A DNA stretch of 64,000 bases, from assembly GCF_001194135.2 (NCBI RefSeq), contig NC_069003.1, forward strand, positions 16,741,531-16,805,530, in the 5' to 3' direction. The first letter of the stretch is position 1. The number at the start of each line of letters is the position of its first letter. Position numbers and translations under genes: made by a program. The stretch comes from Octopus bimaculoides (lineage: Eukaryota). Shown here piece by piece: positions 10,219 through 56,867 of the stretch. The notes beneath the pieces were generated by a model. It searched no databases, was not told the DNA's origin, and saw only the letters and a program-made list of their open reading frames with translations.

Positions 10219-11391
10219 TATATATATATATACAAACACATATATACATACATATACTTACGTGTGTGCGTGTGTGTGCGTGTGTGTGTATATATATGTA
10301 TATATCATATACCTTTATGAATGTATTTATGTGTGTAGGTTTGTAAGTTTGAGTACATTACATTGATATTTGCATATTGGCTAGATTTTCTTCTTGACTG
10401 TTTTCATATGCATGGGCATTGAGTTGTCAAATATTTCTCATTAATTATTCAAGATGTTTTTTCCACATCTGAAACGTCACTGCTTATACGATTCGTTTAT
10501 TCAAAGCATTATTAGATGCAGTGAATTGAAAACGTTTTACGAATCATAGGAAGCGTTATATATTTTATTTATTTTTCGCATTTATTCATATCAAATAGTT
10601 GAAATAAGTATTTCGCGTGAATTTTACATTAATATCGTACAAAAGGAAATGTATGCTAAACAGAAATTTAAAATGATATTCTAACATAGATAGAGATTTG
10701 TATACACGGAATAATATATTTAAAACTAAAATGAGTATATTTGTCGATATATATTAAAATTTGCCTCTTCTGTAATTTTTATTGGGAATGATACCTTTAA
10801 TATGTTTCTATTTTGATGAATCGGTAATATATACATGTAGAAGCGTTTATGAATAATAAATTATTAGCAAACAATAAGCTCATATTACAAAAATAAGGAA
10901 TATATATATACATTGAAGATTAATCGATTACATTTTAAATGAGTAACTCATGATTAGAACATCAAAATAAGCCAGCAGTATATTTAAGAATAAGGAGTAA
11001 AGAGTTAGGGCAGCGGAGGCGGTTTCAGCAGTTGCATCATTACTATGATCACTTGCAGTCTATTAAAAGATGTGGCAAGTGCGTGACATTATCATCATTC
11101 CTTTCGAAATGTGGGCGGAGAATGTCTTGAGACTTTAATGGTCTTAGAAACGTTATAGTCTCAAATTAAGAGAGGCTAATGAGGAAATATATCTCATGAA
11201 GAAATATGCAGAATCTATAGTGATAACAATTAAAGTCAAATATAGGCGTGTCTTCTATAAAACTTTTTCAAACGAAAATTTTCCTCATGTTCATACGCAT
11301 GCATAAATACAATCCACCTCCACAAAACACACACACACACGTACATATGCAAACACACACATATACATATACGCGTGCGTATGTAGATATC

Positions 11392-11431
<40 letters not shown>

Positions 11432-12149
11432 TATATGTGTACCTATTACTATTATCTATTGGTACACGCTCACACACACAGACACTAAGACATATAGACA
11501 TGCACACATTCTAGACAAAAACATACACAAACAAATAATATGTAAATGGAATTAATTAATGTTAGTGTCATAAACCTCAGATTAAGTAGACGGATCGAAA
11601 ATCAATCAAATTATCACGACTTCGAATTAGATCGTTTTATCAGCTTTGAGAACTAAAATATAATTTGCTTATTGTTGTATTTCATTTGTTAGTAGTCTCT
11701 ATTTTTCATTTCCAATCATATAGATATGTGTGTGTGTGTGTGTGTGTGTTGGTGTATGCCTGAATGTGTATGTGTTGGTGTATGCCTGAATTTGTGTGTA
11801 TGTATATAATATAATATGATAGAATATATATATATGTATCCATATATACGGAGAAATAGAATGGAAGGTATATTGGAACAAAAGAAAAGTACATTCAACC
11901 ACCCATATCGAGGGTTTTCAAATTATATTTTGTACAGCTTAGAGTTCTGAATAACTAAGTTTCAGCAGACACAGACAAATCACATCCTATTATTTTGGCC
12001 CTTTTCTCTTTGAAACGATCACGGTTTCTAAAGGAGGTTGTGACTCAAGAATTAAGGTTCATTTTGATATGTCATGTGAATGAAAGCAGCCTTTCGATAA
12101 GTACTGTCGAGTAGGATTTTCTCTGTCAATATCTATACCAAACTCTTGA

Positions 12150-12290
12150 AGTTTCACCAAAGTTGACTTTGCCTTTCATCATTTTTGGGGTCAATAAACT
12201 AAGTGCCAGTTGCATACTGGGGTCGATCTAATCGACTGGGACCCCTCCCGAAAAATTTCGGCCCTTGTTCCTAGAGTAGAAAAGAATATC
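12150..12290 (+). mobile_element. SINE 3' fragment (same family as 46900 and 55970)
   Basis: gactttgcctttcatc...ggggtcgatctaatcgactgg...tagagtagaaaagaata. Confidence 0.7.
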
Positions 12291-13832
12291 TATACCAATA
12301 TCTATTTCGATTGAAATTTTACAATGCCAGTCAAAATCTATAAGCTATTAACATATTACTAAAAGTCATACACAGCGAAGTTTTCTTAGAGGCAAATATC
12401 ATGTATTTTTTATGCTAAAATGATAAAATGGGAGATGTGCTCAGATGGTGTTTTTCATAGCTAAAAACATTTTAAAATAGAACGTGTGTTATTTATCATT
12501 CATTAACAATAATTATTGGTAGATGGAATTATTGACACGTCAGTTCTCAGTATTCAAGCAAATAAAGAAGAAAAAAGCAGGAGTGATATTTAGATGTCTA
12601 TAATTTTACTTGTACGAGCCTAAGGAATATCATGTGTGTATGTAGACTATCTAATGCAATCATAGCTGTAAGGCCTTTATTTGCAGGCCTATATTTATAT
12701 GTGCACTAAATATTGATAATGTGTTTTTTTTGTCTCCGACTTTTACGTTCGCTGACTTGTTCCCAGCAGCTTTTTGCTGATGATACCATCACAATGAACA
12801 ATCTTAGTATCAAAGGCGCAAAACCCTAATGATTTTTGAACAATAGCTGGTGTGAAAAACGTATGTCCACGTCTTGTGTAATTTTTCCATCTTCTCTTTG
12901 TTGTAATTCTTGCTTATACATACATATATATATTTGAATGTATATTTACAGTGAGAGAGGGGGAGAGGGAAGAGAGAGATACATGGTTGAGATAGTGGTT
13001 GGAAATAAGAATTATAATGCGACGGAGATGAACAAGGATAAGGCCTTTAAGTAGATATTTCGATAAAGAAACAATGTTTAGGAGATAGATTATTCTCAGA
13101 CGAGAAAGACAGATAAAAGATATATTTCGAAATAGTTGGTGTGGTAGATAAAGAAGCAGATGTCGAATGAAAGAGGGATGTAAGCATAAAGAAGATGAGA
13201 AAAGTCAGAAAACTCGCGCACAATCTGTAGAGTTTAAAAGTTAAAGACGATCACGCAGATATGCTATCACAGACATTTAATTCGAGCAAAACGGAGAGAG
13301 TAAAAGAGATATATAGAGAAAGAGGGAATATAAAATGTAAGCTAGAAAGTGAAATAGCTCGACAGAGATGAAGAAACAAACAGCAGTAGAAATACGCGTT
13401 TATATATATATATATATATATATATNNNNNNNNNNNNNNNNNNNNNNNNNNNNNNNNNNNNNNNNNNNNNNNNNNNNNNNNNNNNNNNNNNNNNNNNNNN
13501 NNNNNNNNNNNNNNNNNNNNNNNNNNNNNNNNNNNNNNNNNNNNNNNNNNNNNNNNNNNNNNNNNNNNNNNNNNNNNNNNNNNNNNNNNNNNNNNNNNNN
13601 NNNNNNNNNNNNNNNNNNNNNNNNNNNNNNNNNNNNNNNNNNNNNNNNNNNNNNNNNNNNNNNNNNNNNNNNNNNNNNNNNNNNNNNNNNNNNNNNNNNN
13701 NNNNNNNNNNNNNNNNNNNNNNNNNNNNNNNNNNNNNNNNNNNNNNNNNNNNNNNNNNNNNNNNNNNNNNNNNNNNNNNNNNNNNNNNNNNNNNNNNNNN
13801 NNNNNNNNNNNNNNNNNNNNNNNNNNNNNNNN

Positions 13833-13864
<32 letters not shown>

Positions 13865-26971: not shown

Positions 26972-27056
26972 GTAAGTCCATAATAGTAAGGATACAAAGT
27001 AAAAAGTAAAGACCAAGGCTATATTCAGAAGTTGTGAGATCACATATTATTGCATT

Positions 27057-27461
27057 CATCATCATCATCATCGTCGTTTAACGTCCACTTTCCATGCTAG
27101 CATGGGTTGGACGATTTGACTGAGGACTGGTGAAACCAGATGGCTACACCAGGCTCCAATCTGATTTGGTAGAGTTTCTACGGCTGGATGCCCTTCCTAA
27201 CGCCAACCACTCAGAGAGTGTAGTGGGTGCTTTTACGTGTCACCCGCACGAAGGCCAGTCAGGCGGTACTGGCAATGGCCACACTCAAGATGTTGTATTT
27301 CATGTACCACCTGCACAAGAGCCAGTCTAGGGGCACTGGCAACGATCTCGCTCGAAACTCCTACAAAGGCCAGTCAGGCGGTACTGGCAGCGGCCACGCT
27401 CAAAATGGTGTATTTTATGTGTCACCCGCTCAAGAGCCAGTCCAGGGGCACTGGCAATGAT
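27057..27461 (-). mobile_element. RTE 3'-end element with internal duplication (unit about 120 bp), runs into gap
   Basis: (cat)n cgtttaacgtcc start; aaggccagtcaggcggtactggc present twice. Confidence 0.75.
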
Positions 27462-28802
27462 NNNNNNNNNNNNNNNNNNNNNNNNNNNNNNNNNNNNNNN
27501 NNNNNNNNNNNNNNNNNNNNNNNNNNNNNNNNNNNNNNNNNNNNNNNNNNNNNNNNNNNNNNNNNNNNNNNNNNNNNNNNNNNNNNNNNNNNNNNNNNNN
27601 NNNNNNNNNNNNNNNNNNNNNNNNNNNNNNNNNNNNNNNNNNNNNNNNNNNNNNNNNNNNNNNNNNNNNNNNNNNNNNNNNNNNNNNNNNNNNNNNNNNN
27701 NNNNNNNNNNNNNNNNNNNNNNNNNNNNNNNNNNNNNNNNNNNNNNNNNNNNNNNNNNNNNNNNNNNNNNNNNNNNNNNNNNNNNNNNNNNNNNNNNNNN
27801 NNNNNNNNNNNNNNNNNNNNNNNNNNNNNNNNNNNNNNNNNNNNNNNNNNNNNNNNNNNNNNNNNNNNNNNNNNNNNNNNNNNNNNNNNNNNNNNNNNNN
27901 NNNNNNNNNNNNNNNNNNNNNNNNNNNNNNNNNNNNNNNNNNNNNNNNNNNNNNNNNNNNNNNNNNNNNNNNNNNNNNNNNNNNNNNNNNNNNNNNNNNN
28001 NNNNNNNNNNNNNNNNNNNNNNNNNNNNNNNNNNNNNNNNNNNNNNNNNNNNNNNNNNNNNNNNNNNNNNNNNNNNNNNNNNNNNNNNNNNNNNNNNNNN
28101 NNNNNNNNNNNNNNNNNNNNNNNNNNNNNNNNNNNNNNNNNNNNNNNNNNNNNNNNNNNNNNNNNNNNNNNNNNNNNNNNNNNNNNNNNNNNNNNNNNNN
28201 NNNNNNNNNNNNNNNNNNNNNNNNNNNNNNNNNNNNNNNNNNNNNNNNNNNNNNNNNNNNNNNNNNNNNNNNNNNNNNNNNNNNNNNNNNNNNNNNNNNN
28301 NNNNNNNNNNNNNNNNNNNNNNNNNNNNNNNNNNNNNNNNNNNNNNNNNNNNNNNNNNNNNNNNNNNNNNNNNNNNNNNNNNNNNNNNNNNNNNNNNNNN
28401 NNNNNNNNNNNNNNNNNNNNNNNNNNNNNNNNNNNNNNNNNCCATGTAGATATTTTTTAAAAGACTTCAGGGAGACTACCTTCATGAAATGTCGTGGTCT
28501 AATCGGTTTATGGCTGGCCATATGTGTGTGTGTGTGTTTGTGTTTTGGGGAAGGAATTATTTTTATGTTAAAAATATTTTTATTGAATTGAATGGTAGAT
28601 TACTTTTCTATTGAAAATATAGTTGGCTGTATGTATACGTTCTGTTAAATGAATTTTAACAATTTTATTGAAGGGGTTTGTGTGGAATTACTTTTCATTT
28701 ACTTTGTGGTGTGAGTAAATGAAAAATAATTCCTTTAAAACCTCTTCAATAAAATTGTTGACCACCTTTAAAATTTATTTAACATAAATGTATTCAGATA
28801 AA

Positions 28803-31724: not shown

Positions 31725-32171
31725 NNNNNNNNNNNNNNNNNNNNNNNNNNNNNNNNNNNNNNNNNNNNNNNNNNNNNNNNNNNNNNNNNNNNNNNNNNNN
31801 NNNNNNNNNNNNNNNNNNNNNNNNNNNNNNNNNNNNNNNNNNNNNNNNNNNNNNNNNNNNNNNNNNNNNNNNNNNNNNNNNNNNNNNNNNNNNNNNNNNN
31901 NNNNNNNNNNNNNNNNNNNNNNNNNNNNNNNNNNNNNNNNNNNNNNNNNNNNNNNNNNNNNNNNNNNNNNNNNNNNNNNNNNNNNNNNNNNNNNNNNNNN
32001 NNNNNNNNNNNNNNNNNNNNNNNNNNNNNNNNNNNNNNNNNNNNNNNNNNNNNNNNNNNNNNNNNNNNNNNNNNNNNNNNNTGTGTCTGGATAGGAGGTA
32101 TGATGAGTATAACAGCTGGAATGTTTTTTCTCTTATAGAGCTACTGGACTAGGGCTGGCCAGAGGTCAAAC

Positions 32172-32360: not shown

Positions 32361-32661
32361 AAACTTATAAGAAGACTAAGACAAACCTATATTTTCATGA
32401 GTGATTCTACAAGATGCAGGTAATTTCCTATTAATTCTTTTTTTTTTTCTCAAAGGGTTTTCAACCCAATATTTGCATGCTATTATTTATAGCTTTATGT
32501 GCTCCAAGATCCATTGCTTCAAAAAAGAATTATTCCATGTCCTCTTGAAAGTTTATAAATTCTTTTGACATCAAATTTCTGATTATTTTTTCTTAATGAC
32601 TATGTTATAAGTGAAAATCCCAACAAGGATCCATTTAATGACATTCCTGTTATATAGAGGG

Positions 32662-32875
32662 ATTAGATTTAATTAAACACCAGTAAAATACTGGCACAGA
32701 TTCCATTAAGTTCCAGTTAAATACTGGATAGATTTAATTACATAGTAATTAAATATTGGTATAGATTTTATTAGATACCAGTTAAATACTTAGCAAAAAT
32801 TAATTAACTACTAGGTAAATACTGGTATAGATTTGATTAGATACCAGCTAATAACTAGGGTAGATTTAATTAGGT
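32662..32875. repeat. 32-33 bp minisatellite (about 6 units) with internal CCAGT/ACTGG hairpin
   Basis: Unit cores at about 32680, 32713, 32745, 32778, 32811 and 32844; consensus close to ccagttaaatactggtatagatttnattagata. Confidence 0.8.
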
Positions 32876-34675
32876 TGTTTCCAATATTATTAACACACGA
32901 ACTGGTTCAATTCCACTCCATTTTTATTAGTCAATTGCTTAAGTATTCAACTAACTAATCAATTATTTGTTTAATTTGGTTAAACAGTAAGTCATTTGTT
33001 TTGTTTTTGTTTGTCAAAACACTTTCATTGCTACTTGTAACCTTTTCAATGACTTTTGACTTAGTCTGTAATGGAGGTCGTGTTTATCTGCTTGAGATCT
33101 TGTTGTGTGAGTTTGTGTGTGTGTGTGCTAGTGTGCACATGTGCTTATGTATGTATGGTTGTATGTATATATTTAAGTATGTATGTATGCATGCATGTAG
33201 GTATGTAAGTATGTATGTATGCATGCATCTATATGGTATGTATTCTGTGTATTTTTGTGTCTGCGTGTGTGCATGCTTGTATATTTGTGTAGGAAGGATT
33301 ATTATTATTATTACCACTAGCTCGTTGTCGTCGTCATCATCTTGACTGTTTCTTTTATTTAAATATTTTTTCATTGGTTTCAGTCAGTGAACTGTGGCCA
33401 TGCTGGAGTACCACCTTCAAAAGATTTTATTCAATTATATATCAACTCCAATATTTAGTCTGATATCTGTTTCATTGATCTGGCCCTGTCTGCAGCACAT
33501 GCCACCATAACACCACATTACATTTGGCTGGAACCTCACACCAGCCACAAATTTAATCAGTAGCCTTCAACAGACTGTCTCATTTATAGAAACTTTCAGG
33601 TTTTCCTCTATGTTATACATCTCTATCTCCTCTTCCCTTCTACCATATGTGTTAGCTACAACTTCTTTGAATCTATAACCAGTCAAACACTCAACTCCTG
33701 TGTTTTTCTTCCTTATATTGTCATTTATCTCTGAGTTCTGCCTCCAAAGTTACCAATCACTAATCTATATTATGTCCTATATCCTTCATCAATGAAAATT
33801 TGGCATTTACAACCATCTCCCTATTCCATTTTCACCTGAGAATAAAGTCTAATTGACCTATGTGTTCATGTGATTGGTAGGTGATCACATCCTGGGTATG
33901 ACTTTAAACTGCTCTCAGTAGTATGGCCCTAGTTTGGGAGCTCCAGGCTTTTGAGAAGAGTGGAACCATCTCATAGATACTATTATTCTTAGGTCTACTC
34001 TAACCCAGAGTTGTAACACCTGTCAAGGTCACATCAATGGTTTAATTAGCATATCAGGGCTTGCCTACTATGCATGCAGAGATTTGATCTAGTGGACTCT
34101 GCAGAAGCAACTTTCATGGTTCAGTGGAGGGAAGGGCTGCTGTAGCAGCACATTAATGAAGTGCAGAGAGCAAGATGAGACAAAGTAAGACATTTTGGTC
34201 ATCCACTGCATCCATCTCTATCCCAGTCATCTTGACGTAGTCTTGCCACTGGACTGAAGATGGTAATGACAACAGTTTACAACTCTTCACTTTAAACAAA
34301 GTTACTACATAAGCCATCAGTCATTCTTATGATGACTAGATGATCCTCACCACTCCAACAGACAAACATAGGGGAGGTGATCAGGTAGCAGCTAGTTTCT
34401 TGAAGTTCATTTTGCAGATAGTATTACAGAATTTCAGGATCCTTGACATTCCTTCATTCTTTGTATCATGTCTATAGCCTCTCTGTACATCAGAGAAGCC
34501 ACACTAGTACTTACATTAAAATTGCATGCGATAGTAAGGAGGTTACTATCATTTGCTTTTGAGCTATTCTGCAAAACGGTCTCACAGAAGTAGTCCTTTT
34601 CTTCATTTGTTTAACTTGGTTGTAATGTTGCTGTTGTTTTGTTAAGCTACATACATACATTTGTACATACGTATC

Positions 34676-36128
34676 ACTAAAGAACATAACAATTGAATAA
34701 AGAAAATTTGGACCTCAGAACTCTCTGAAGTCAATAAACCAGTGACCTACAGTGTGTTTGCAGTGCCAGTACTCATACCACCATTTGGGCTGCTTGATTG
34801 ATATCTGAGCCATTGATCTGGAAATCTAGAAAATACTAACAAGCACACATAATTTCCACATAAAGAGTGACAGAGATTGCCTTTACCTAAAATGAAAACA
34901 AGGCAGCAGTGGCTTAACCTCGATCCAAAATGCCTTTGAGTATCATATCATATCCCTTCAGCAACATCTTTTAACCACCAAGTGCATCCCTTGATCAAGT
35001 TTGCATAAAAGAGGCTAATAACATCATAAGACTTGGAAGGCAGCTCTTTGAGCAGCTTTTCTTATCTGATAACCTTAAATAAATGCCCAAAGAAGTCACA
35101 CAACTCTACTGCAACATATCATCAGATGAAAGGATGAGCATATATGAGCAGAAGAACATGTTAGTAGAAAGCTCTGAGATGATAGTAACATTGATTATCA
35201 AAGCAGTCTATCATGGACCAATAACCAAATTACTGCCTCCCACTTTGAAGGGTATATGTTTGCAATCCAAGAACAGGAAATATCAACCAAATACCTGATG
35301 CACAAAAGAGACAGAGATGCAGGAAAAGCAGTAAAATGTGACAACCAGTGCTGACATTGTGGAGTTAACACTGAAGATATCACCCACATAAGCAGGTGTC
35401 TGAAAAAATGTCATCACAGTATTATCTACTGATGAGACATGATATTGTAGCTAGGACACAATATAAAGAAATCTGTCGGAAGGATAACCCCAAGGACAGA
35501 GAAATAAGAACCCACAGTATGGTAGAAGCCAAAGCCACTCATAATAAAAAGGTGTACTGGTGGAATGTCCCAGTGAAAATCTCAATAAAATGTAAGCACA
35601 ACAGACCTGATATAATGATTTGGAATGGAGAAGAGAAACTGTATCCAGTTGTCGAAATTAGCTGCTCAGTGGATGTTAATATAAAGTTGAAGATCAGTGA
35701 AAAGGAGAATACCTATGCTGAATTATTGAGAAATCTGCAGTTACTCTATCCAGATTACACGTTCAGGTTTATACCTATAATTATTGGGGCCCTGAGATAT
35801 GTAACACATTGCCTAAATACCAATATTGAGAAATTATGCTTTTCAAAGCCAGAAAGGAGAAAGCTGATTCAAAGACTACAGATCCAACCAACCTCTGAAA
35901 CTGCAAAAACCTGTAAAACTTTCCAGAAGTTTATCATGTCTAGAGATACAAGTATATGCATGAGAAGACACATAAAACAAAACATACAAATTTTCACACA
36001 TATATATATATATGCATACAAAAATACCCTGTTGTTGATGTTGAAATTCGAATGAAGGAGCCTTGGATCTAGGTTAGAAACCGGCTCTTTCTTGGATGGC
36101 AAGAAATCTTGAAATAAAACTGAATAAG
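34676..36128 (+). mobile_element. R4/Dong-like non-LTR retrotransposon (RLE type), 5'-truncated copy 1
   Basis: CCHC knuckle C*HCGVNTEDITHI..C, RHDIVAR, WWNVPV..KCKHNRPDIMIW, VEISC, EKENTYAELLRNL, FIPIIIGAL; 3' UTR ends aaataaaactgaataa. Confidence 0.85.
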
Positions 36129-36159
36129 GACATGCACACACACACACACACACACACAC

Positions 36160-37858
36160 TGTTTCTTTGTGGATCACTTAAAACTATATGCCAAGAAATT
36201 GCATGAGATGAAAAATAGCCTTTATCTGGTTAAACATTCTCTAAGAATAAATGTTGCTATGCGGTTGTGAAAAGAGGGAAAACTGTAAACCAAACTAGCA
36301 GCATTTCTATCAATGACTTAACTGTTTCCCCTATGTCTAATGAGGAATGTTACAGGCACCTAGGGATGGATGAAAGCATATCTTATGATGACACCTGTAA
36401 CAAGAAACTTGTCACTAAAGAATATGATGGTTGAATAAAGAAAATATGGGCCTCAGAATTTTCTGCATTCAATAAAACTGGCCTACAGTGTGTTTGCAGT
36501 GCCAGTACTCATACCAACATTCAGACTACTTGGTTGGCTGCTTGATGGGAATCTGAGCCATTGATGTAAAAACCCAGAAAATACTAACCAGCACACATAA
36601 TTTCCACATCAACAGTGGACTGTCTTTACCTAAAATGAAAATAAGGCAGCAGAGAGGCCTTTGATCCAGACTGCCTTTGAATGTCATATCATATCTCTTT
36701 GACATCTTTTAATCACCAAATGTTGAAGTGCATCCCTTGACCAAGTTTGCAAACATAAGGCTGATAACATCAGGAGACTTGAGGAGCATCCCTTATCTGA
36801 TAATCTTAAATATATGCCCAAAGAAGTCACGTACTCTACTGCAACATATCATCAGATGAAAGGATGAGCATATATCAGCAGAGGGTCATGATGGAGATGA
36901 TAGCAGGAATGTTGTGGGATGATAGTAACATTGATCATCAAAGCAGTCTATCATGCACCAACAACTGGGTTACTAACTCCCATTTTGTAGGGTATGAGTT
37001 TGCAATCCAGGAACAAGAAATATCAACCAAATACCTGATGCACAAAAAGAACAGTGATGCAGGAAAAGCAGTAAAATGTGACAACCAATGCAGATTTTGT
37101 GGAGTTAACACTGAAGATATCACCCACATCATAAGTAGTTGTCTGAAAAAATGTCATTACAGTATTATCTACCAATGAGGATTTTGTAGCTAAGACAATG
37201 TATAATGAGATCTGTCAAAAGGATAACTCTGAAGCCAAAGAAATAAGAACCCACAGTATGGTAGAAGCCATAGCTACTCAAAATAAAAAGGAGTACTGGT
37301 GGAATGTCCCAGTGAAAGTGTCAATAAAATGTAAACATAACAGACCAGGCATAGTGATGGAAAAGAAAAGCTCTATACATACAGTTGTGGAAATCAGCTG
37401 CTTGGCAGATGTTAACATAAATCTAAAAATCAGCAAAAATGAAAATACCTATGCTGAACTATTGAGAAATCTACAGTTACTCTACCCAGATTACAAATTC
37501 AGGTTTATACCTGTAATTATTGGGGCACTAGAATATGTAACACATTACCTAAGTACCAATCTTGAGAAATTAGGCTTCTCAAAAACAGAAAGGGGAAAGC
37601 TGATTCGAAGACTACAGATCCAAGCCATCACTGGAACTGTAAAACTCTGTAAAACTTTGTATGTCTAGACATGCAACTATATGCATGAGAATACATACAT
37701 AAAACAAAATATAAAAATCTGCACATACACTGACTCCAAATACTGCACATATACAAAAATACCCTGTTGATGTTGAAATTCCAATGGAGTCTTGGATCTA
37801 GGTTAGAAACCCACTCTTTCTCAATAGGCAAGAAATCTCGAAATAAAACTGAACAATG
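36160..37858 (+). mobile_element. R4/Dong-like non-LTR retrotransposon, 5'-truncated copy 2
   Basis: Degenerate RT motif FVDHLKLYAK, CYRHLG, CRFCGVNTEDITHIISSC, HNRPGI, VEISC; same 3' UTR as copy 1. Confidence 0.87.
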
Positions 37859-37977
37859 AGATACATAAATACATGCATACATATGCATCTGTATAAACAT
37901 ATATACATACCATACAAACATGCATACATACATACATACATACACACCTGCATGTATGTATGTGTCTCTCTCTCTTG

Positions 37978-38014
<37 letters not shown>

Positions 38015-39019
38015 CACATACATATACATCTTATATAAAATAGACCTGAGTGTGTGTGCATTTGCTTTTCATGTGAAAACAGCTGCACGAATTGCTTCCA
38101 TACTTGGGGTGCATGAATAATTTGACCTCGGATACATAATAGGGTCTTCAGTTTATTTTTTTATTAAAAATAAATAATATTGTTTTTATATATGATTCTT
38201 TAAAAAGTTTCTCAATATCAACTCCTGGTATTCACGTAGTAACAGCGAAATTTTCTATTTTCATTTGCAAAATCTCTTGCTCTCTATTTTAATGTTTTCA
38301 TTTCAAGTTTTAATTCACTCTTTACAAACAACTATGATAAATTACTGAAAGAAATATTTACTAAGTTCACGAATTTAAATATTTGGTACAAAATAGTTTT
38401 TAACGAGCTTTTATTTATAAGATTTTTTTCATTTCATGTTTATTTCATTCATTGTTTGCAATGTCCTCTCTTTCTCTTACGCTCTCACACACACACAAGT
38501 CAGTCACACATGCACACATATGCTTTTGTATGTATGTTTGTATACATTTATGTATGTATGTGTGTTAGTGTGTGTGTGTGTGTGAAAGAGAAAGAGAGAG
38601 TCAGTCAATGAGTTTGTTGTCATGTATACATATATATATAAATACATGTGCATACACCTTTGTGTGTGTGTGAAACAGAGAGAGTGATGTCTAAGTGGCA
38701 TGCAGTCTCTCTCTCTCTCACACACACACACATACACACAAAAAGATATATGCATATTTATGTATGTATACATGACAACATACTCCTTCACTCTCTCTTT
38801 CCCTCTCTCTCTCGCACACCCATTTCATCTGTTGTTTGATATTCTGTGTGTGTGTGTGTGTGTGTGTGTACCTGCATGGTATGTGTGGGGCATTCCACAA
38901 TCGCTATTTATTGCAATCACTCTCGTGAAGATATTCACGTAACTCCTTTTTTCATTTAATCCCCATTTTAACTTTTGAAAAAGTTTCCAAGAACAATGTT
39001 CTCACTTGTTACAAGAGTC

Positions 39020-40025
39020 AGGACAGATGTAGATAATCAGTGAAGCAAAGACGAACATAGGTAGCCAGAGTCAATGTTGAATCCTGCAACTCTGTTAACT
39101 CTATTAAGTATGTTTGCAAATATATAAATAAAAGTTTAGATGCTGCAACATACACTCTTATGCAGAATGGCAGTCAGCAGATAAACAAAAATGACAAAGT
39201 TGCACAGTATGACAGAGAAAGATACATCAGTACCAATGAGGCTTTTTGGCACATCCTCAATTTTCTCATTCATAAGAGGCAGCCAGCCATCATTCATTTG
39301 AGTCTTCATCTAGAGAATGGTCGCACGGTTATCTTTACAGAACAAACAATCTTGCAACAAGCACTTTCTTAAAACGAAACTACTCTTACTGCCCCTTTTA
39401 GTTGTGTGAAGTAGATGAAGATGCAGGAAAACTCCTTTATCCACAATTACACCAGGAGAAACAATAAAAGGCTCAAGAAGAAATGGGCTGACGTTCTTGC
39501 AAGAGTTTACAGTGACCCCACCAACCCAGCAGAATGCTACTACTTACAGCTCTTTTTGCATGAAGTACGTGGTCTCGAATCATTCCAAGATTCAAGGAAG
39601 GTAAATGGTCATGTATGTGAAACTCATAGAAAAGCATGCTATCAACAAGGTTTTTTTTTTAGAAAACAATGAGCTTGCATTGACTGAAGCATCAGTGTCA
39701 GATTCTCCAATGAAACTCCATGACATTTTTGCAATTATACTGAACATGTGTCAACTTGGCAGTTCCCTCAGCTTTGGATGAAACATCAAGAGGACATGGC
39801 TGAGGACAGGCAAACCCAGATATCAATATTCAGTTCTCTGATTGAAACTGAGGATCAAGTTTTGGCCATGGGAGGGGAAAATTTGCATGAGTCTGGCTCT
39901 GGAGTGCCAAAAACCATCAAATTAGTGATTTAACTTCAAAAACATAACAAGAGAGTCAAATTCTGACATCATAGACATGGTTGCATTTGTGAATGAACAT
40001 GAACCTAAACTTCTTCCAGAATAAC
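39020..40025 (+). mobile_element. Helitron remnant of an older, different family
   Basis: NVESCNSVNSIKYVCKYINK, RYISTNEAFW, LHLENG, ECYYLQLFLHEVRG, LWMKH.EDMAED, EHEPKLLPE. Confidence 0.9.
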
Positions 40026-40204
40026 GCTATGCATGTGATGAAATTTTTCGATTTTTATTATTATCATTTTTTTTTTGTATTATGAATTCAGAATTGATTT
40101 CCCAATTGAAGAATAAATTGAATTTACAATAACAAATTTCTATACAACATATTTTGTGTTGTTCTTCCAATATATAAGGAACAGTTTCATTCTCAGGCAA
40201 CACT

Positions 40205-40583
40205 GGGTGCCTGACTGTGTGGTAAGAAGTTTGCTTCCCAACCACATGGTTCCTGGTTCAGTCTCACAGCATGGCACCTTGGGCCAGTGTCTCCTACTAT
40301 AGCCTCAAGCCAACCAAAACCTTGTGAGTGGATTTGGTAGGCGGAAATTGAAAGAAGCCTGTCATGTGTGTGTGTGTGTTTGTCCCCCCAGCATTGCTTG
40401 ACAACTGATGTTGGTGTGTTTAAGTCTCCATAACTTAGTGGTTTGACAAAAGAGGCCGATAGAATAAGTACTAGGCTTATAAAGAATAAGTCCTGGGGTC
40501 AATTTGTTCAACTAAAGGCAGTGCTCCAGCATGGCCACAGTGAAATTACTGAAACAAGTAAAAGCATAAAAGAATAAAAGAAT
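40205..40583 (+). mobile_element. Near full-length tRNA-derived SINE
   Basis: gactgtgtggtaagaagtttgcttcccaacc...ggttcagtc head, central (tg)n, (taaaaga)n tail. Confidence 0.85.
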
Positions 40584-40640
40584 ATATATGTAAAAACTTA
40601 CTGTTGACAAAGGCTACATGGCATTCAATTATAAATAATT

Positions 40641-40838
40641 AAAAATACACATTAAGTACAGGATATCACCAACGAGTGAAAAATATATAAACACACAGAG
40701 ATAAGTACAGGACAAAATACGTGTACTTAATGTGTATCTTTCTGTATTTTTTTTTTTTGTATTTGTTCTGTACTTATCTCTTGTGTGTTTACATATTTTT
40801 CACTCGCTGGTGATGTCCTGTACTTAATGTGTATTTTT
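40641..40838. repeat. Foldback with about 80-bp arms
   Basis: 40641-40720 matches the reverse complement of 40759-40838. Confidence 0.9.
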
Positions 40839-42079
40839 AAATATATGTATATATATATATATAAACCGGCAGAAAGACCGCCCTCTGGGTGGTTTTCTGC
40901 TAGCTTCTTAATAATATTTTCACATTTGATTCTGAATTCTAATATATTTTATATTTTACATTGAATTATTTCTTTGTATAATTAGTGCTCACTTGCTTAG
41001 TAAATACTGCTTTCATTATTTTATCACAGTCATAATCTTTTAAACAAACATCACTGTAGTCCAGCAACAGAGGGAGAAGCAATTTATCAAGAGTTACCTT
41101 CCCCTCAGAGCAACATAGAGATTACATTTCAGCAGCCCATTTGTAAGCTTTGCAGTGTGTGTGTGTGAGAAAGAGAGGGGGAGAGAGAACATTGCAAACA
41201 ATGACTGAAATAAACATGAAATGAAAAATCATATAAATAAAAAGGCATTACTACAGATGTATATGCCCCCAATTTTGTTGCCTCATAACATCCAGAAAAA
41301 TGAATACTTTTTAACAAAATTTTCTACAAATACCGCTTAGATGTTGTGGCTTCAGAGTATATAGAGATTTATAGAAAAGAATTTTTCAAGGTGATGTTTT
41401 TTTCTGAGAGGAGTTATGTAAAATCCACAAGATCTGACTTTTTTCTCTCATAACTTTCATAAATGAAAATTTATACAAATCCCTTTTAAATGGCATAGAT
41501 TACGATTATAAAGAAATTTGTGGGGAAAATATTTTCAGAGATTTTTCCCCATTTTTTTTAAACCACATCCTTTGGGTGGGGGTGAACATCTTTGTATGAA
41601 AAAAGCTTTGAAAACTCTTTTTTTTACAACCCTCCCCTCCCTCATCATCCCACTCCGGACCTATTTTGGCCAATTTTTTTGCACTTCACAACAATAGGAA
41701 GAGCATTTTCGGTAAAAAGGATTTTTTTATTGTTAATATTTTTAGAGGGAAAAGTGAATGGTTTAAAGGCGATTTGACTGTTGTTTCTTGCATATCCAAA
41801 GACAACTCTACTCGTTTCTTTATCACTCTCACTTGTATTGATGTTTTTCAATATTTTTTCCCCATAAATACATTTATATGCTATAAAAATGAAAATTTGA
41901 GAAATTATGAATTTTTAGCAACCCCACTCCCTGCTCCTAATTGTTTCTGTTTAGAAATTGAAATATTGAAAAGCCCAAAAGGTCATTGCTGGCATTTATC
42001 CACAGTGATTTAAAAAATTAGGGAGATGTACTTGCATAGCAAGTGACTTGATCTGAGATTGTGTGCTGAGGCAAAAACT

Positions 42080-42369
42080 ATTGCAGTGTGGAAGATATTT
42101 GTAAGCCATTCAAGAACACACAAAAACAGTTAGTTTCACTTCAACATTAAAATTTCATTTGTGTCAAAATATTTTCATCACTTTGAAACCTCGACCTGTT
42201 CACTGACAAAACTTCATAAAAGTGATGCAGCATGAAGCTTTGTCATTGAACAGGTTGTGGTTTCAAAGGCATGAAAATATTTTGACTCAAATAAAATTTA
42301 AATGTTGAAGTGAAACTAACTGTTTTTGTGTGTTCTTGAATGGCTTACAAACATCTTCCACACTGCAAT
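42080..42369. mobile_element. Foldback MITE-like element, 138-bp arms and 14-bp spacer
   Basis: 42080-42217 vs reverse complement of 42232-42369, high identity. The left arm extends to about 42020 (gggagatgtacttgc) without a partner. Confidence 0.85.
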
Positions 42370-42765
42370 TGTTGTTGAGTTAAAAAAAAAGAGTTATGTA
42401 AACGTTAATTCATTTTTATAGCATACTTTTTGATTAGAAAATGTTTTTTTTTTACACACACATGGCTTTGCTTGATTTAGGTGGGGGTAAAAATTTGGAT
42501 TACAAATTATTTTTNNNNNNNNNNNNNNNNNNNNNNNNNNNNNNNNNNNNNNNNNNNNNNNNNNNNNNNNNNNNNNNNNNNNNNNNNNNNNGGCATGTAA
42601 AAGCACCCACTACACTCTTGGAGTGGTTGGTGTTAAGAAGGGCATCCAGCTGTAGAAACTCTGCCAAATCAGATTGGAGCCTAGTGTAGCCATCTGGTTC
42701 ACCAGTCCTCAGTCAAATCGTCCAACCCATGCTAGCATGGAAAGCGGATGTTAAACGACGACGAC

Positions 42766-42797
<32 letters not shown>

Positions 42798-43135
42798 CAT
42801 GTGAGAATGAAAAGGGGGGGTGTTTTGGGTTGTGCTAGAAATAACAGCAAAACCTCCCTTGAATTGTTCACCCATTCCTCTAAAAATATTTACAATTTGT
42901 TTTGTTTTATTTTCTTTTACTGAAAAGGCAGAGCTTTGGTTGCCAGTGTCAATTTTCTGTTTGAATTGATTTCATATTCAGTGTAATTATACACTTTTAT
43001 AGGCAAATTAATGATGTGAAAGAGTTATTAGTAATTAAAGTTGAAAATTTTGGTAATTTTAGTCAATCATAAGTCACAGACACATTCATGTCTGTTTTGA
43101 TAGTATCAAGCGGAAACATGAGAACTCTTTTGCCT

Positions 43136-43149
43136 GTTGCCATAGTAAC
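43136..43149. promoter_or_regulatory. RFX X-box-like motif GTTGCCATAGTAAC
   Basis: Fits the GTTGCCATGGCAAC-type consensus; lies about 1.2 kb upstream of the candidate start codon at 44377. Confidence 0.45.
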
Positions 43150-44376
43150 ATAGTAACATAGTCTTTGAAAATCTGTGAGGAAGCATGTGTTGACAGCCGT
43201 CTTTGAAAAGTCTTTTATCTGTGAGGAAGCACACATAACATATAAACATGTTCATCTTTTAGAACATTGTCATTTTATAAGATTTTGCTGGTAAATTTTT
43301 AAATTAGCATAAACATTTGTTTACGTGAAAGGAAATTATCAGTGAACTTTTGTGATGAAAATACCAGCTAAAAAGATTTTTTGGACAAATCTTTTGAATT
43401 AAAGTTTATTTGCCAACATCTCATTCAGAGATTTAAAACAAACTGCTTTTCTCTTTTAAATTAACATAAACATTTATTTACATGAAAGAAAATTACCGGA
43501 GAAATTTTATGCTAAAAATAACAGCTAAATAAGATTTATTTACATGAAAGAAAATTATTGGAGACATAACATGTGTTGTTTACAAATATTGACAACATGT
43601 GCTATTTTCAGGATGTTGACGACAAAATGTGCAGTCACGCACAAAACGACAGCTTCCAAATCCTGTTTGTTTTCTGACTGGGGGAAAATGATCAAACTTT
43701 AAACCTCTATAACTTTTTCAGTTTGGGCAAGTGTATTATTGTGCCAAATTTGAAAATTTTCAGTAAACTTTAATTTTTGGAGCTGCTGGCAACCAAACCA
43801 AATGGTTTTTAAGTTAGAAGGGAAAATGGCCAAATTCGGTCCAGGTAGTTATTATTGTAAGGCTTATAGTGTTCCAAACAGCCATAATAACAAAATCACT
43901 TTAAATTTCTTTTACAAAAATTATATGGGTATTTTAAAAAATTTTCAATAAATAATGTTTTTACATTATGTATACATTAATAGAATAAACTGTCGGTTTT
44001 CGAAATAGTGATTTAAAACTTGAAATGAAAACATTAAAAGAGAAAGTGAGAGACTTTGCAAATGAAAATGGAATACTCCACAGTGAATGCAATGAATATT
44101 TAAATTTGCGAAAAATTGGAGTTAAAAAATTCAATAAACTTGAGAAATCAAAATTATAGGAAATTTCTTAGAACATGAATTTATAAAAATATTTCCAGAC
44201 AGTCAACCCTTTAATAATTGCTTTCTTTTAGTACTTTTAGTAATTGCTACATACCTAATTAATAAACAGCTTTCTCCATTATAGTATAGATATGTGTGAA
44301 GAAAGGACACAAACAGTTAAGGTTCACTACATTTGTTTCAGACATGTTTTTTGTTGATGAATAATTCAATTACATC

Positions 44377-44755
44377 ATGAAAAAAAAAAGTTTTCTTCAG
44401 GTGAGTTAAAATTTAAAATTTGGACCAAGATCTGGAATGTGGATTGATCCTCTCATTTTAGCAACAAATGAGAGAATCATTTGAGATCTTATTTATGTAT
44501 ACACCACACCTGAGACCTTCTTTGTGCTGGATTTAGAACTTACATTGGATCATGAAACTACATGTCAATTTGCATGGGTATATAATTTCATGTACATGTA
44601 TATGTAAGCATGAATATGTCCATAAATGCATGACTATATGTGAGTGTGTTTGTATATGGTATATAGATGGATGTGTGGATTTTGGCCCTCATTTGGAATC
44701 ATTAATGTTAAAATACCTTGATTCAAATGAATCCAACAAATAATTAATAATACAA

Positions 44756-44795
<40 letters not shown>

Positions 44796-45247
44796 TCAAA
44801 ATTATCTTTCAGAATTCATATGGAGCATCTTCAGACAGCAGGAAATCATGGTTAGCAAGTGCCTTCTGCATCAAAGACAGTCATTTGGGAGAGTGCCTGC
44901 TCTCAACTAATGCACGTGAAGACCGACGCCTGATACTGGTGTTGAACAACTTATCACGAGAATACCAAGATGCACAACGCATGCAGCGAATTCATGTTCG
45001 CAACTTTCTCAATAGATCCTATGTTTTGCACCACAAGCCAGTCCAATGTAGTGGTGGCCATTTGCCATATATTGCAGGGCTTATGTGTTCTAGAGATGTC
45101 ATAGAGCTCCCTCCAATTAGAGTAATTAACCCTGCTGCTCAGTTGGTCTTGAATACCAGGTACCAAGGTTCAATACCAGTGCAGAATAGATTGCCACACT
45201 GCAACAAGCAGTTATTTAGATCCAGCACAGTTTTCAGAAGACATTAA
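44377..45247 (+). CDS. Candidate host gene, join(44377..44400,44813..45247), 152-aa uncharacterised protein
   Basis: Acceptor tttgtttcag| at 44341, ATG 44377, donor CAG|GTGAGT at 44400/44401, acceptor ttatctttcag| at 44812. Both junction phases are 0, giving MKKKSFLQ-NSYGASSDSRKSWLASAF...LNNLSREYQDAQRMQRIHVRNFL...FRRH*. The 435-nt terminal exon is uninterrupted, non-repetitive and has no TE motif I recognise. Confidence 0.62.
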
Positions 45248-45279: not shown

Positions 45280-45745
45280 AAATAGATAGAGCTACAGTGC
45301 CAATAAAGATGTCACCACTATAATACTATCTTTTTAATGACAATAAAGATATTACAATGGTAACAATAATGACAGCAAAGATATCATCACAGTGCTAATA
45401 TAAATACAATGACAGTGACAATAAAGATATCACCACAGTAACAATATTTATATGACTACAGTGACAATGAAGATATCATCACTGCAATATTATCTTTTCA
45501 ATGACAATAAAAATATCACCTTGATAACTGTATCTTTTGTATAACAATAAGGATATCATTACAGTAATAATATAGCTACAACTACAGTAGCAATAAAGAT
45601 AGCACCACAATAACAATATTGATACAACTGCAGTAACAAAAAAGATATCACCATGGTAACTGTGGTAACTCATGACAATAATTATATCTTCACAGTGACA
45701 ATATAGACACAACAACAGTATCAACAAAGACATCACCATGATAAC
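45280..45745 (+). repeat. Degenerate minisatellite (about 40 bp; gacaataaagatatcaccacagtaacaat), resumes at 46741-46890 after an RTE insertion
   Basis: Recurring caataaagatatcac units. Confidence 0.75.
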
Positions 45746-46740
45746 ATCGTCATCATCATCATCATCGTTTAACATCCGCTTTCCATGCTGGCATGGGTTG
45801 GATAGTTTGACTGAGAACTGGCAAGCCAGAAGGCTACACCAGGCTCCAATCTGATCTGGCAAGGTTCCTACAGCTGGATGCCCTTCCTAAAGCCAACCAC
45901 TCCAAGAATGTAGTGGGTGATTTTTAGATACCACCAGCACAGGAGCCAGTCAGGTGGCATTGGCATTGGCCATGCTCAAACGGTGCTTTTTAGATGCCAC
46001 CAGCACAGGAGCCAGTCAGGTGGCATTGGCATTGGCCATGCTCGAATGGTGCTTTTTACATGCCACCAGCACAGGAGCTAGTCAGCCTGCAATGGCATCA
46101 ACCACACTCGAATGTTGCTTTTTACATACCACTGGCACTGTCATCGGTTATGCTAGGATGGTGTTTTTTACGTGCCACCAGCATGGGTGTCAGTCAGGTG
46201 GCACTGCCATCGGCCATGGCAACAATTTTATTTTACTCGATAGGTCTTCTCAAGCACAGCATATTGCCCAATGATTGAAGGGTACTTTTAAATGGGCTAG
46301 TTATGCAACACTGGCATTGGCCAAGGCTATGATCTCACTTGGCTTGCAGGTCTTCTCAAGCACAGCATATCTCCAAAGGTCTCGGCTGCTTGTCATTGCC
46401 TCTGTGAGGCCCAATGTTTGAAGGTCATGCTTCACCACCTCATCCCATATCTTCTTGGGGGGTCTATCTCTTCCACAGGTTCCCCCCACTGTTAGGGTAT
46501 GACACTTCACACAGCTGTCCTCATCCATATGCAATACATAATCATACCAGTGCAGTTCTCTGTCTTGCACACCACATCTTTTCTCTCAGGGCACTTACAC
46601 TCTGTTGTGTATGCACAGTAGATCATACTAGCTTCATTTCTTTCAAGCCTATGCATGTTCTCAGCAGTTGCAGCCCATGTTTCACTGCTGTGTAGCATGG
46701 CTGTTCATGCACATAAATCATACAGTCTACCTTTTACTCA
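45746..46740 (-). mobile_element. 5'-truncated RTE LINE with (GAT)n tail
   Basis: MLHSSETWA...; KKIWDEVVKHDLQTLGLTEAMTSSRDLWRYAV; possible TSD agtatcaacaaaga(c/t)atca at 45717-45735 and 46741-46759. Confidence 0.85.
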
Positions 46741-53500: not shown

Positions 53501-54812
53501 CGCTTCTCATATATATATATATATATATATATGAACTAGCCGGTATACAGCACTTACTCGGTATTACCTGTATCTTTGGGTTTAGTTAAATCCAATACCT
53601 TTCTTAACCTTATATATATATATATATATATATATCATAATATTAGGGATAAGAATCCAAAGTTACAGGTTAGAATTCAATTAAAATCAATTTATTAAAA
53701 ATTAAAATTAAATTAAGTTTCACNNNNNNNNNNNNNNNNNNNNNNNNNNNNNNNNNNNNNNNNNNNNNNNNNNNNNNNNNNNNNNNNNNNNNNNNNNNNN
53801 NNNNNNNNNNNNNNNNNNNNNNNNNNNNNNNNNNNNNNNNNNNNNNNNNNNNNNNNNNNNNNNNNNNNNNNNNNNNNNNNNNNNNNNNNNNNNNNNNNNN
53901 NNNNNNNNNNNNNNNNNNNNNNNNNNNNNNNNNNNNNNNNNNNNNNNNNNNNNNNNNNNNNNNNNNNNNNNNNNNNNNNNNNNNNNNNNNNNNNNNNNNN
54001 NNNNNNNNNNNNNNNNNNNNNNNNNNNNNNNNNNNNNNNNNNNNNNNNNNNNNNNNNNNNNNNNNNNNNNNNNNNNNNNNNNNNNNNNNNNNNNNNNNNN
54101 NNNNNNNNNNNNNNNNNNNNNNNNNNNNNNNNNNNNNNNNNNNNNNNNNNNNNNNNNNNNNNNNNNNNNNNNNNNNNNNNNNNNNNNNNNNNNNNNNNNN
54201 NNNNNNNNNNNNNNNNNNNNNNNNNNNNNNNNNNNNNNNNNNNNNNNNNNNNNNNNNNNNNNNNNNNNNNNNNNNNNNNNNNNNNNNNNNNNNNNNNNNN
54301 NNNNNNNNNNNNNNNNNNNNNNNNNNNNNNNNNNNNNNNNNNNNNNNNNNNNNNNNNNNNNNNNNNNNNNNNNNNNNNNNNNNNNNNNNNNNNNNNNNNN
54401 NNNNNNNNNNNNNNNNNNNNNNNNNNNNNNNNNNNNNNNNNNNNNNNNNNNNNNNNNNNNNNNNNNNNNNNNNNNNNNNNNNNNNNNNNNNNNNNNNNNN
54501 NNNNNNNNNNNNNNNNNNNNNNNNNNNNNNNNNNNNNNNNNNNNNNNNNNNNNNNNNNNNNNNNNNNNNNNNNNNNNNNNNNNNNNNNNNNNNNNNNNNN
54601 NNNNNNNNNNNNNNNNNNNNNNNNNNNNNNNNCACGTAAAAGCACCCACTACACTCTCTGAGTGGTTGGCGTTAGGAAGAGCATCCAGCTGTAGAAACTC
54701 TGCCAAATTAGATTGGAGCCTGGTGTAGCCATCTGGTTGCACCAGTCCTCAGTCAAATCGTCCAACCCATGCTAGCATGGAAAGCGGACGTTAAACAATG
54801 ATGACGATGATG

Positions 54813-54850
<38 letters not shown>

Positions 54851-56763: not shown

Positions 56764-56867
56764 TTTTTTGAATGCCATGCCTGATCATGTGATGAGTGAC
56801 CTTTCCATATCTTGAACACAGTTGATACATTTTGGTGATGATACTGGGTTAAAACACAATAGCTAGC
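56764..56867 (-). other. Candidate isolated 104-nt coding exon
   Basis: Minus-strand acceptor ttcttcttctgcag| and donor |gtaagt; single open frame ASYCVLTQYHHQNVSTVFKIWKGHSSHDQAWHSK. Confidence 0.4.

What the first reader, a model, noticed from the sequence alone, without database searches (positions are those of the whole stretch)
44342..45247. Hidden small host gene (152 aa) that the ORF track only partly shows
Seen: an 8-codon first coding segment with a strong GTGAGT donor splices in phase to a 435-nt terminal exon; the ORF track starts it at an internal TTG. It is the best non-TE coding candidate in 64 kb. The segment LSTNAREDRRLILVLNNLSREYQDAQRMQRIH looks helical. I recognise no known family. 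Inference: an uncharacterised, possibly lineage-restricted gene.
Basis: partly seen in the sequence, partly recalled or inferred. Interest (0 to 1): 0.7.

Follow-up and report, generated by a model that had tools for sequence, protein, structure and literature searches.

The report
Annotated small orphan gene in octopus
The 435-base exon is the real last exon of a small, selectively constrained, apparently lineage-restricted protein gene.

Summary
The terminal exon (44813..45247, +) is real. Its acceptor, frame and length match Octopus sinensis LOC115223524 (146 aa, 91% identity) at a syntenic locus. dN/dS is 0.26 against O. sinensis and 0.13-0.18 within a second, deeply diverged clade of unnamed eukaryotic contigs. 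A roughly 29-residue core is invariant although synonymous sites between the clades are saturated.

The proposed first exon (44377..44400, MKKKSFLQ) is present as described. It has no counterpart in O. sinensis, and no database protein uses it. A UniRef/MetaClust protein equals 'MQ' plus this window's exon 2. The sequence AAGATGCAG|GTAATT that starts the O. sinensis model occurs identically at window 32414..32419. The supported model is therefore 146 aa with a 12.4-kb, transposon-swollen intron, not 152 aa.

An exhaustive profile search of 1.84 billion protein representatives, Pfam, NCBIfam and PDB sequences found no other relatives. AlphaFold predicts one long helix and a disordered basic tail (pI about 10). 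There is no signal peptide.

The gene lies antisense inside intron 1 of the GABA transaminase (ABAT) gene.

Verdict: a real gene, already annotated and uncharacterised. It is one of many clade-restricted genes. Interest is low.

The parts
32414..32419 (+). Coding end of the supported exon 1 (ATG CAG), followed by the donor GTAATT at 32420. An in-frame TGA lies four codons upstream, so this ATG is the first possible start. An out-of-frame upstream ATG sits at 32398. The 5' limit of the exon is unknown, and an assembly gap at 31725-32081 lies just upstream.
   Evidence: The 19-nt CTACAAGATGCAGGTAATT is identical to O. sinensis L001 9994-10012, where the annotated CDS starts at 10001. P0001 and P0004 both start MQ|NSYGAS.
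32420..44812 (+). Intron of 12,393 nt, against 2,351 nt in O. sinensis. It is expanded by lineage-specific insertions, including a 1.5-kb tandem duplication (34674-36152 and 36412-37881) that carries TE-like ORFs.
   Evidence: Colinear blocks are L001 10738-11281 = window 32757-33313, L001 11826-12048 = window 40367-40589, and L001 12321 onward = window 44776 onward.
44377..44400 (+). It is unsupported. At most it is a species-specific alternative first exon.
   Evidence: There is no counterpart in O. sinensis and no database protein with this N-terminus. Ten consecutive A's would encode KKK.
44813..45247 (+). Terminal coding exon: 144 codons plus the TAA stop at 45245-45247.
   Evidence: It is 92.6% identical in nucleotides to O. 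sinensis with no indels, and dN/dS is 0.26. The acceptor AG and the phase are conserved in all homologous contigs.
44843..44932 (+). The most conserved core, KSWLASAFCIKDSHLGECLLSTNAREDRRL. Twenty-two residues (CIKDSHLGECLLSTNAREDRRL) are invariant in all homologues. The segment has two Cys and one His and is flanked by conserved dibasic pairs (RK/KK and RR).
   Evidence: Many codons in this block differ synonymously between clades.
44912..45025 (+). Predicted long alpha-helix (exon-2 residues 34-71). The remainder of the protein is predicted to be disordered.
   Evidence: window protein: pLDDT 52-62 in the helix, 44 overall. (P0002: helix 5-54, pLDDT up to 87).
45302..45347 (+). Two AATAAA candidate poly(A) signals, 55 and 95 nt after the stop codon, at the start of an AT-rich 23/46-nt tandem repeat.
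   Evidence: The homologous contigs also have AATAAA 20-45 nt after their stop codons. Their use is inferred, not shown.
56764..56830 (-). Coding part of exon 1 of the host gene ABAT (4-aminobutyrate aminotransferase): MYQLCSRYGKVTHHMIRHGIQK.., with donor GTAAGT. The small gene lies antisense in the intron that follows this exon.
   Evidence: an Aminotran_3 gene on the minus strand spans the O. sinensis locus. (exon 1 aligned). (the next exons in O. sinensis match PDB 1ohv GABA-AT, E = 4e-18).

Best explanation
This is a genuine two-coding-exon nuclear gene for a 146-residue protein. It is already annotated as an uncharacterised protein.

Gene structure: exon 1 contributes only ATG CAG (32414-32419), a 12.4-kb intron follows, and exon 2 (44813-45247) encodes everything else. 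The gene sits antisense in intron 1 of the octopus ABAT (GABA transaminase) gene.

Shown:
- orthology and synteny with O. sinensis LOC115223524;
- purifying selection in two deeply diverged clades;
- no detectable relatives elsewhere.

Inferred (low confidence): the product is an intracellular, strongly basic protein (pI about 10) without a signal peptide or membrane segment. It would act as a binding module rather than an enzyme. The nearly invariant N-terminal segment (SWLASA-x-CIKDSHLGECLLSTNAREDRRL) and the long helix it leads into would dock onto a conserved partner, either protein or nucleic acid. The poorly conserved, disordered, basic C-terminal half would tolerate change.
For: - Homologues: P0001 (O. 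sinensis, 91% identity, 100% coverage), P0002 and P0003 (43-46%).
- P0004 in the same 90% cluster equals 'MQ' plus window exon 2 exactly.
- Colinear synteny between the window and O. sinensis chromosome CM016881.1.
- The exon 1 junction sequence is identical. The exon 2 acceptor is identical and the exon has no indels.
- dN/dS is 0.26, from 16 synonymous and 16 non-synonymous changes on 96 and 336 sites (p = 5e-4). By codon position the changes are 9:6:17.
- Within the second clade dN/dS is 0.13-0.18 (p about 1e-13). Between clades pS is about 0.9 while pN is about 0.39.
- Indels between clades and next to the acceptor are multiples of three.
- This exon is the only element shared between 20 kb of the distant contig and the window.
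- No TE domain and single copy.
- A profile search of 1.84e9 representatives returned only P0001 and P0002.
- One long helix is predicted in both orthologues.
- pI is 10.1-10.2 in all four sequences, and the maximum 19-residue hydropathy is 1.04 or less.
Against: - No transcript or junction data could be consulted. The exon 1 assignment rests on two database gene models and on sequence identity of a 2-codon exon. Flank conservation there (about 91%) is not above background.
- A 2-codon initial coding exon is unusual, and an upstream out-of-frame ATG exists at 32398.
- One homologous contig (L007) has a 1-nt shorter A-run between the acceptor and the conserved core. If genuine, it would break the frame upstream of the internal Met.
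- The organisms behind the second clade could not be named.
- The mechanism is inference only. Structure confidence is low (pLDDT 44-55) and no heptad pattern was evident.
Confidence: 0.75

Rival explanations
1. The gene starts at the proximal mini-exon 44377-44400 (MKKKSFLQ), splices 44400/44813 and encodes 152 aa, either as the main isoform or as a species-specific alternative isoform.
For: It has a perfect CAG|GTGAGT donor, which is the only CAGGTGAGT on the + strand of the window. It is also the only ATG...AG|GTRAGT phase-0 candidate in the 12.4 kb upstream. Simulated sequence gives at least one such candidate in only 6% of trials over the whole intron, and 0.3% within 500 nt. There is an A at position -3 of the ATG.
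Against: The interval 44100-44775 has no counterpart in the syntenic O. sinensis interval, which holds a palindromic MITE-like element instead. No database protein carries this N-terminus, and the 90% cluster has only the two MQ-start members. A 10-A run would have to be translated. The candidate was selected after the fact.
Confidence: 0.1
2. The exon is the last exon of a longer protein whose upstream coding exons are missed by current models. One possibility is an exon encoding a signal peptide. That would make the invariant 26-residue, two-Cys segment flanked by RK/KK and RR a processed secreted peptide.
For: The 2-codon start is odd. Conserved dibasic pairs flank SWLASA[FM]CIKDSHLGECLLSTNARED in all homologues. 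The region just after the acceptor is variable, like a propeptide spacer. Assembly gaps lie near exon 1.
Against: An in-frame TGA lies four codons upstream of the ATG in exon 1, in both octopus species. Any extension would therefore need a different exon. Two database models agree on the MQ start. The segment lies within or next to a confidently predicted long helix. No hydrophobic N-terminus is present.
Confidence: 0.1
3. It is not a functional protein gene. Alternatives are a decayed TE or pseudogene ORF, a conserved non-coding element in the ABAT intron, or an antisense lncRNA with a fortuitous ORF.
For: It is located inside an intron of another gene in TE-rich DNA. It has no known domain. 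The C-terminal half is less constrained (dN/dS 0.53).
Against: There is a synonymous excess in two independent clades. The ORF stays intact at about 140 codons in every homologue although synonymous sites are saturated. Indels are in frame. The exon is single copy with no TE domain. Conservation is frame-specific: the antisense frames are open for only 43-70 codons.
Confidence: 0.04

Closest known systems
Octopus sinensis LOC115223524 (XP_029650014.1, UniRef100_A0A6P7TFH9), 'uncharacterized protein'
   Same: It is the orthologue. Identity is 91% over the full length and both proteins are 146 aa. Both have the two-segment CDS (ATGCAG plus a 435-nt exon). The locus is syntenic and lies antisense in ABAT intron 1.
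   Different: The intron is 2.35 kb there against 12.4 kb here. There are 13 amino-acid differences, mostly in the C-terminal half.
Unnamed homologues P0002/P0005-P0007 (Logan contigs from 9 or more sequencing runs) and P0003 (ENA assembly ERZ21867824)
   Same: The acceptor position and phase are the same. The CIKDSHLGECLLSTNAREDRRL core is invariant, and the RMQRI, SYVL-H-P, LP-I, GS and CNK-L motifs are conserved. Length is similar, the proteins are basic, a long helix is predicted, and a poly(A) signal lies close after the stop.
   Different: Identity is only 43-47%. They have Met where octopus has Phe before CIKD. The source organisms were not identified; decapodiform cephalopods is my inference and was not tested. 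The upstream exon is unknown, and no ABAT exon was seen within 10 kb on either side in L005.
Nominally cephalopod-specific genes as a class (Albertin et al. 2022, PMC9068888: 1,597 D. pealeii genes similar only to other cephalopod genes; examples include reflectins)
   Same: It has no detectable similarity outside the clade and is conserved within it.
   Different: It is a single-copy, intron-nested small gene rather than one of the tandem-array families discussed there. No link to any cephalopod innovation is known.
Prohormone or neuropeptide precursors (a working analogy only)
   Same: A short invariant segment with two Cys is flanked by conserved dibasic sites.
   Different: There is no signal peptide in the supported or the proposed model. 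The segment is predicted to be helical and continuous with a long helix. Membership is not supported.

Membership tests
Orthologue of O. sinensis LOC115223524 | Full-length sequence similarity | tested here: met
   91% identity, 100% coverage, E = 2e-84.
Orthologue of O. sinensis LOC115223524 | Conserved synteny and orientation relative to neighbouring genes | tested here: met
   Colinear blocks run over L001 5354-17650 = window 20578-62420. ABAT exon 1 lies on the opposite strand in both.
Orthologue of O. sinensis LOC115223524 | Same exon-intron structure | tested here: met
   The acceptor ...TTATCTTTCAG|AATTC is identical. The exon 1 end AAGATGCAG|GTAATT is identical. Actual splicing in this species was not observed.
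Transposable-element protein | TE domain (RT, transposase, integrase, helicase) or multiple copies | tested here: not met
   No Pfam hit at E <= 10. The exon is single copy in the window and in L001. There is one contig per cluster member.
Taxonomically restricted (orphan) protein-coding gene | No homologues outside the clade in sensitive searches | tested here: met
   An hmmsearch profile against 1.84e9 representatives returned only P0001 and P0002. Pfam, NCBIfam and PDB gave nothing significant. Caveat: small unannotated genes are under-represented in protein libraries, and genomes of other molluscs could not be searched at the DNA level.
Taxonomically restricted (orphan) protein-coding gene | Evidence that the ORF is maintained by selection | tested here: met
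   dN/dS is 0.26 (p = 5e-4) and 0.13-0.18 (p about 1e-13).
Taxonomically restricted (orphan) protein-coding gene | Transcription and translation | not testable with these tools
   No RNA-seq or proteomics access. An exact-sequence look-up found no transcript contig.
Secreted peptide / prohormone precursor | N-terminal signal peptide | tested here: not met
   The N-termini MQNSYGASSDSRKS and MKKKSFLQNSYG are hydrophilic. The maximum 19-residue Kyte-Doolittle mean is 1.04 or less.
Secreted peptide / prohormone precursor | Conserved dibasic cleavage sites flanking a conserved peptide | tested here: met
   RK/KK before SWLASA and RR after NARED in all homologues. Cleavage itself was not tested.
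Coiled-coil protein | Heptad pattern of hydrophobic a/d positions along the helix | tested here: inconclusive
   The best register has 6 of 11 hydrophobic a/d positions. A single long helix is predicted. The oligomeric state was not modelled.

The most novel reading that the evidence does not exclude
The invariant roughly 29-residue N-terminal segment could be the functional unit of a clade-specific microprotein. It contains two Cys and one His, is flanked by conserved dibasic sites and leads into a long helix. Two readings remain open:
- it is a docking motif for a conserved cellular machine;
- if an unannotated signal-peptide exon exists, it is a processed disulfide-looped peptide signal specific to this lineage, presumably coleoid cephalopods.
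Probability: 0.08. Interest if true: 0.5.

Novelty: already known. Interest (0 to 1): 0.2.

Why it matters
This is mostly a correction to the scan. A real gene was spotted from raw sequence, but it was already annotated, and the 5' exon deduced from splice consensus alone is probably wrong. The supported first exon is only two codons long and lies 12 kb away across a transposon-swollen intron.

Biologically, it adds one well-supported case of a small, strongly constrained, apparently lineage-restricted protein nested antisense in the GABA transaminase gene. Such genes number in the thousands in cephalopods (PMC9068888), and almost none have been studied. The invariant 22-29-residue core makes this one a tractable candidate if its expression pattern turns out to be interesting.

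Tried and rejected
- **Family searches.** Pfam and NCBIfam scans of the spliced protein and of P0002 gave no hits, even at E <= 10. A PDB sequence-profile search gave only chance-level hits: MRPS25 at E = 0.71 and L31 at E = 4.
- **Fold search.** I did not run one. Both AlphaFold models are a single helix plus low-confidence coil (pLDDT 44 and 55), so any matches would be meaningless.
- **Naming the source organisms of the distant homologues.** A literature search for the run and assembly accessions and for LOC115223524 returned nothing. A database search with a neighbouring RT fragment of L005 returned only unnamed ENA proteins.
- **Spliced-transcript contigs.** An exact look-up of P0004 found nothing on record.
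- **Exon 1 in the distant contig.** A search for an exon-1-like AAGATGCAGGTAA motif upstream in L005 found none. This is uninformative.
- **ABAT exons 2 and 3 in the window.** They were not found. They are either hidden in an assembly gap (19133-19643) or displaced beyond the window by the Helitron-rich first 20 kb.
- **Non-coding RNA.** Rfam and tRNA scans of the whole window found nothing.
- **TE origin.** Rejected, because the exon is single copy and carries no TE domain.
- **Conserved non-coding element.** Rejected, because of the synonymous excess and the frame-preserving indels.

Full report
**What is in the sequence.**
There is an ATG at 44377, followed by eight codons (MKKKSFLQ) ending at 44400. 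A GTGAGT donor begins at 44401. The polypyrimidine/AG acceptor ends at 44812. An open frame then runs from 44813 to the TAA at 45245-45247. The mechanical ORF list shows this frame only from an internal TTG at 44885 (120 aa). The frame is actually open from 44744. The exon is a GC island of about 44% in a background of 25-33%.

**The terminal exon is a real coding exon.**
A search with the 144 residues of the exon returned three protein clusters.
- P0001 is Octopus sinensis 'uncharacterized protein LOC115223524' (XP_029650014.1): 146 aa, 91% identity, full coverage.
- P0002 (Logan contigs) and P0003 (an ENA assembly) are unnamed proteins at 43-46% identity.

The O. sinensis locus (L001, chromosome CM016881.1) is colinear with the window over L001 5354-17650 = window 20578-62420. 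This makes it the orthologous locus.

The 435-nt exon aligns without any indel and has an identical acceptor. There are 16 synonymous and 16 non-synonymous differences on 96 and 336 sites. This gives dN/dS = 0.26 (Fisher p = 5e-4). The ratio is 0.14 for the first 78 codons and 0.53 for the rest.

In the second clade the genomic contigs show the same layout. An acceptor (tttcag|) lies in the same phase, the frame is open from the acceptor, the stop is in a similar position, and an AATAAA lies 20-45 nt after it.

Within that clade dN/dS is 0.13-0.18 (p about 1e-13). Between the clades synonymous sites are saturated (pS about 0.9) while pN is about 0.39. Indels are multiples of three.

The 22 residues CIKDSHLGECLLSTNAREDRRL are invariant in all sequences, and the preceding SWLASA is nearly so. 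Many of their codons differ synonymously between the clades.

This exon is the only thing shared between 20 kb of the distant contig L005 and the whole window. It is single copy in the window and has no TE domain. I therefore reject the TE, pseudogene and non-coding-element readings.

**The proposed first exon is not supported.**
The O. sinensis protein begins MQ|NSYGAS. Its CDS range (L001 10001-12792) equals ATGCAG plus the 435-nt exon. The annotated first coding exon is therefore two codons long and ends ...CTACAAGATGCAG|GTAATT. Exactly this 19-mer occurs in the window at 32407-32425, inside a colinear block of about 90% identity. That puts the ATG at 32414 and the donor GT at 32420.

The second member of P0001's 90% cluster is P0004 (sources UniRef and MetaClust). 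It is exactly 'MQ' plus the window's exon 2. The window's own species therefore already has this 146-aa model in public databases. No protein with the MKKKSFLQ start exists in that cluster.

The 300 nt before the acceptor there are a palindromic MITE-like element.

Composition-matched simulations produce at least one such candidate in only 6% of trials. A species-specific alternative first exon therefore cannot be excluded without RNA data. I give it about 0.1.

The supported intron (32420-44812) is 12,393 nt, against 2,351 nt in O. sinensis. The difference comes from inserted and duplicated repeat sequence.

Some caveats apply to exon 1.
- I could see no transcript data.
- The 5' end of the exon is unknown, and an assembly gap (31725-32081) lies just upstream.
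- An in-frame TGA four codons before the ATG rules out a simple upstream extension.
- An out-of-frame upstream ATG sits at 32398.

**Genomic context.**
In O. sinensis the small gene lies inside a minus-strand gene whose product has an Aminotran_3 domain. The next exons of that gene (L001 4689-4558 and 3729-3610) match 4-aminobutyrate aminotransferase structures (1ohv, E = 4e-18). Its first coding exon aligns to window 56830-56764 on the minus strand.

The small gene is thus nested antisense in ABAT intron 1. This is shown for O. sinensis. It is inferred for the window, where ABAT exon 2 is not present. That exon may fall in the N-gap at 19133-19643, or beyond the Helitron-rich first 20 kb.

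**What the protein is.**
An exhaustive HMM profile search of 1.84 billion cluster representatives returned only P0001 and P0002. Pfam, NCBIfam and PDB sequence searches gave nothing significant.

AlphaFold2 with the shallow 4-sequence alignment gives low overall confidence: pLDDT 44 for the window protein and 55 for P0002. Both models agree on one long helix and no confident structure elsewhere. The helix covers exon-2 residues 34-71, and residues 5-54 in P0002, where pLDDT reaches 87.

All four homologues are strongly basic (pI 10.1-10.2) and lack any signal-peptide-like or membrane-like segment. The helix shows no clear heptad pattern.

**Most likely mode of action (inference).**
I think this is an intracellular small basic protein that works by binding. 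The invariant Cys/His-containing segment and the helix would form the interface for a conserved protein or nucleic-acid partner. The C-terminal half would be a tolerant, disordered tail.

A more adventurous reading is a processed peptide. It is prompted by the conserved RK/KK and RR pairs flanking the invariant two-Cys segment. It would require an unannotated signal-peptide exon, and I rate it at about 0.1 or less.

**Comparison with what is known, and novelty.**
The gene is the orthologue of an annotated, uncharacterised O. sinensis gene, and it is itself in UniRef. As a feature it is already known; only its function is not. It belongs to the large class of nominally cephalopod-specific genes. 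Albertin et al. (2022) counted 1,597 such genes in the squid D. pealeii (PMC9068888).

I could not name the organisms of the second clade. That they are decapodiform cephalopods is my inference, based on the divergence pattern.

**Unexplained item.**
Contig L007 has six rather than seven A's between the acceptor and the conserved core. This would shift the frame upstream of the internal Met. It may be an assembly error in a homopolymer.

**Verdict.**
Interest is low (0.2).

Noticed in passing
window 4531-17362 (+): A Helitron-like element. Pfam hits are Helitron_like_N (E = 6e-58, 5827-6546), PIF1 helicase (E = 6e-40, 8334-8903) and the Pif1 2B domain (16745-17359). It is partly duplicated (7040-7588 repeats at 14689 onward) and is interrupted by assembly gaps.
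   Followed up: partly
window 56764-56830 (-): First coding exon of the ABAT (GABA transaminase) orthologue. The whole region from about 20.5 kb to 56.8 kb appears to be its intron 1. Exons 2 and 3, seen in O. sinensis, are absent from the window.
   Followed up: partly
window, 15 N-runs (e.g. 19133-19643, 27462-28441, 31725-32081, 53724-54632): The window is a gapped draft assembly. One gap lies 330 nt upstream of the small gene's start codon. Another lies where ABAT exon 2 would be expected.
   Followed up: no
window 34674-36152 and 36412-37881: A 1.5-kb tandem duplication (80% identity) inside the small gene's intron. Each copy carries a TE-like ORF (35396-36055 and 37198-37668) with no Pfam match. 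It is absent from the O. sinensis intron.
   Followed up: partly
window 45370-45746 and 45916-46132: A 23/46-nt AT-rich tandem repeat begins about 120 nt downstream of the gene's stop codon. It carries repeated AATAAA and is shared with O. sinensis. A separate 66-nt tandem repeat (3.3 copies, 88% matches) lies further on.
   Followed up: no
window 27056-27341, 42592-42779, 45731-46035, 54633-54827: A SINE-like repeat family of about 185 nt. It has several copies in the window and in the O. sinensis locus (83-93% identity).
   Followed up: no
L007 (ERR3431203) about 30 nt upstream of position 659: The homopolymer run is A6 instead of the A7 seen in sister contigs, between the acceptor and the conserved SWLASA. 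It is either a frameshift or an assembly error.
   Followed up: no
L001 12125-12300 (O. sinensis): A palindromic MITE-like element lies immediately upstream of the exon 2 acceptor in O. sinensis. It is absent from the window.
   Followed up: no
L005 10385 onward: The database protein P0003 (176 aa) reads through two TGA codons as Trp. It was evidently called with a non-standard genetic code on a eukaryotic contig in a metagenome-style assembly. The real product ends ...EIKTK.
   Followed up: yes
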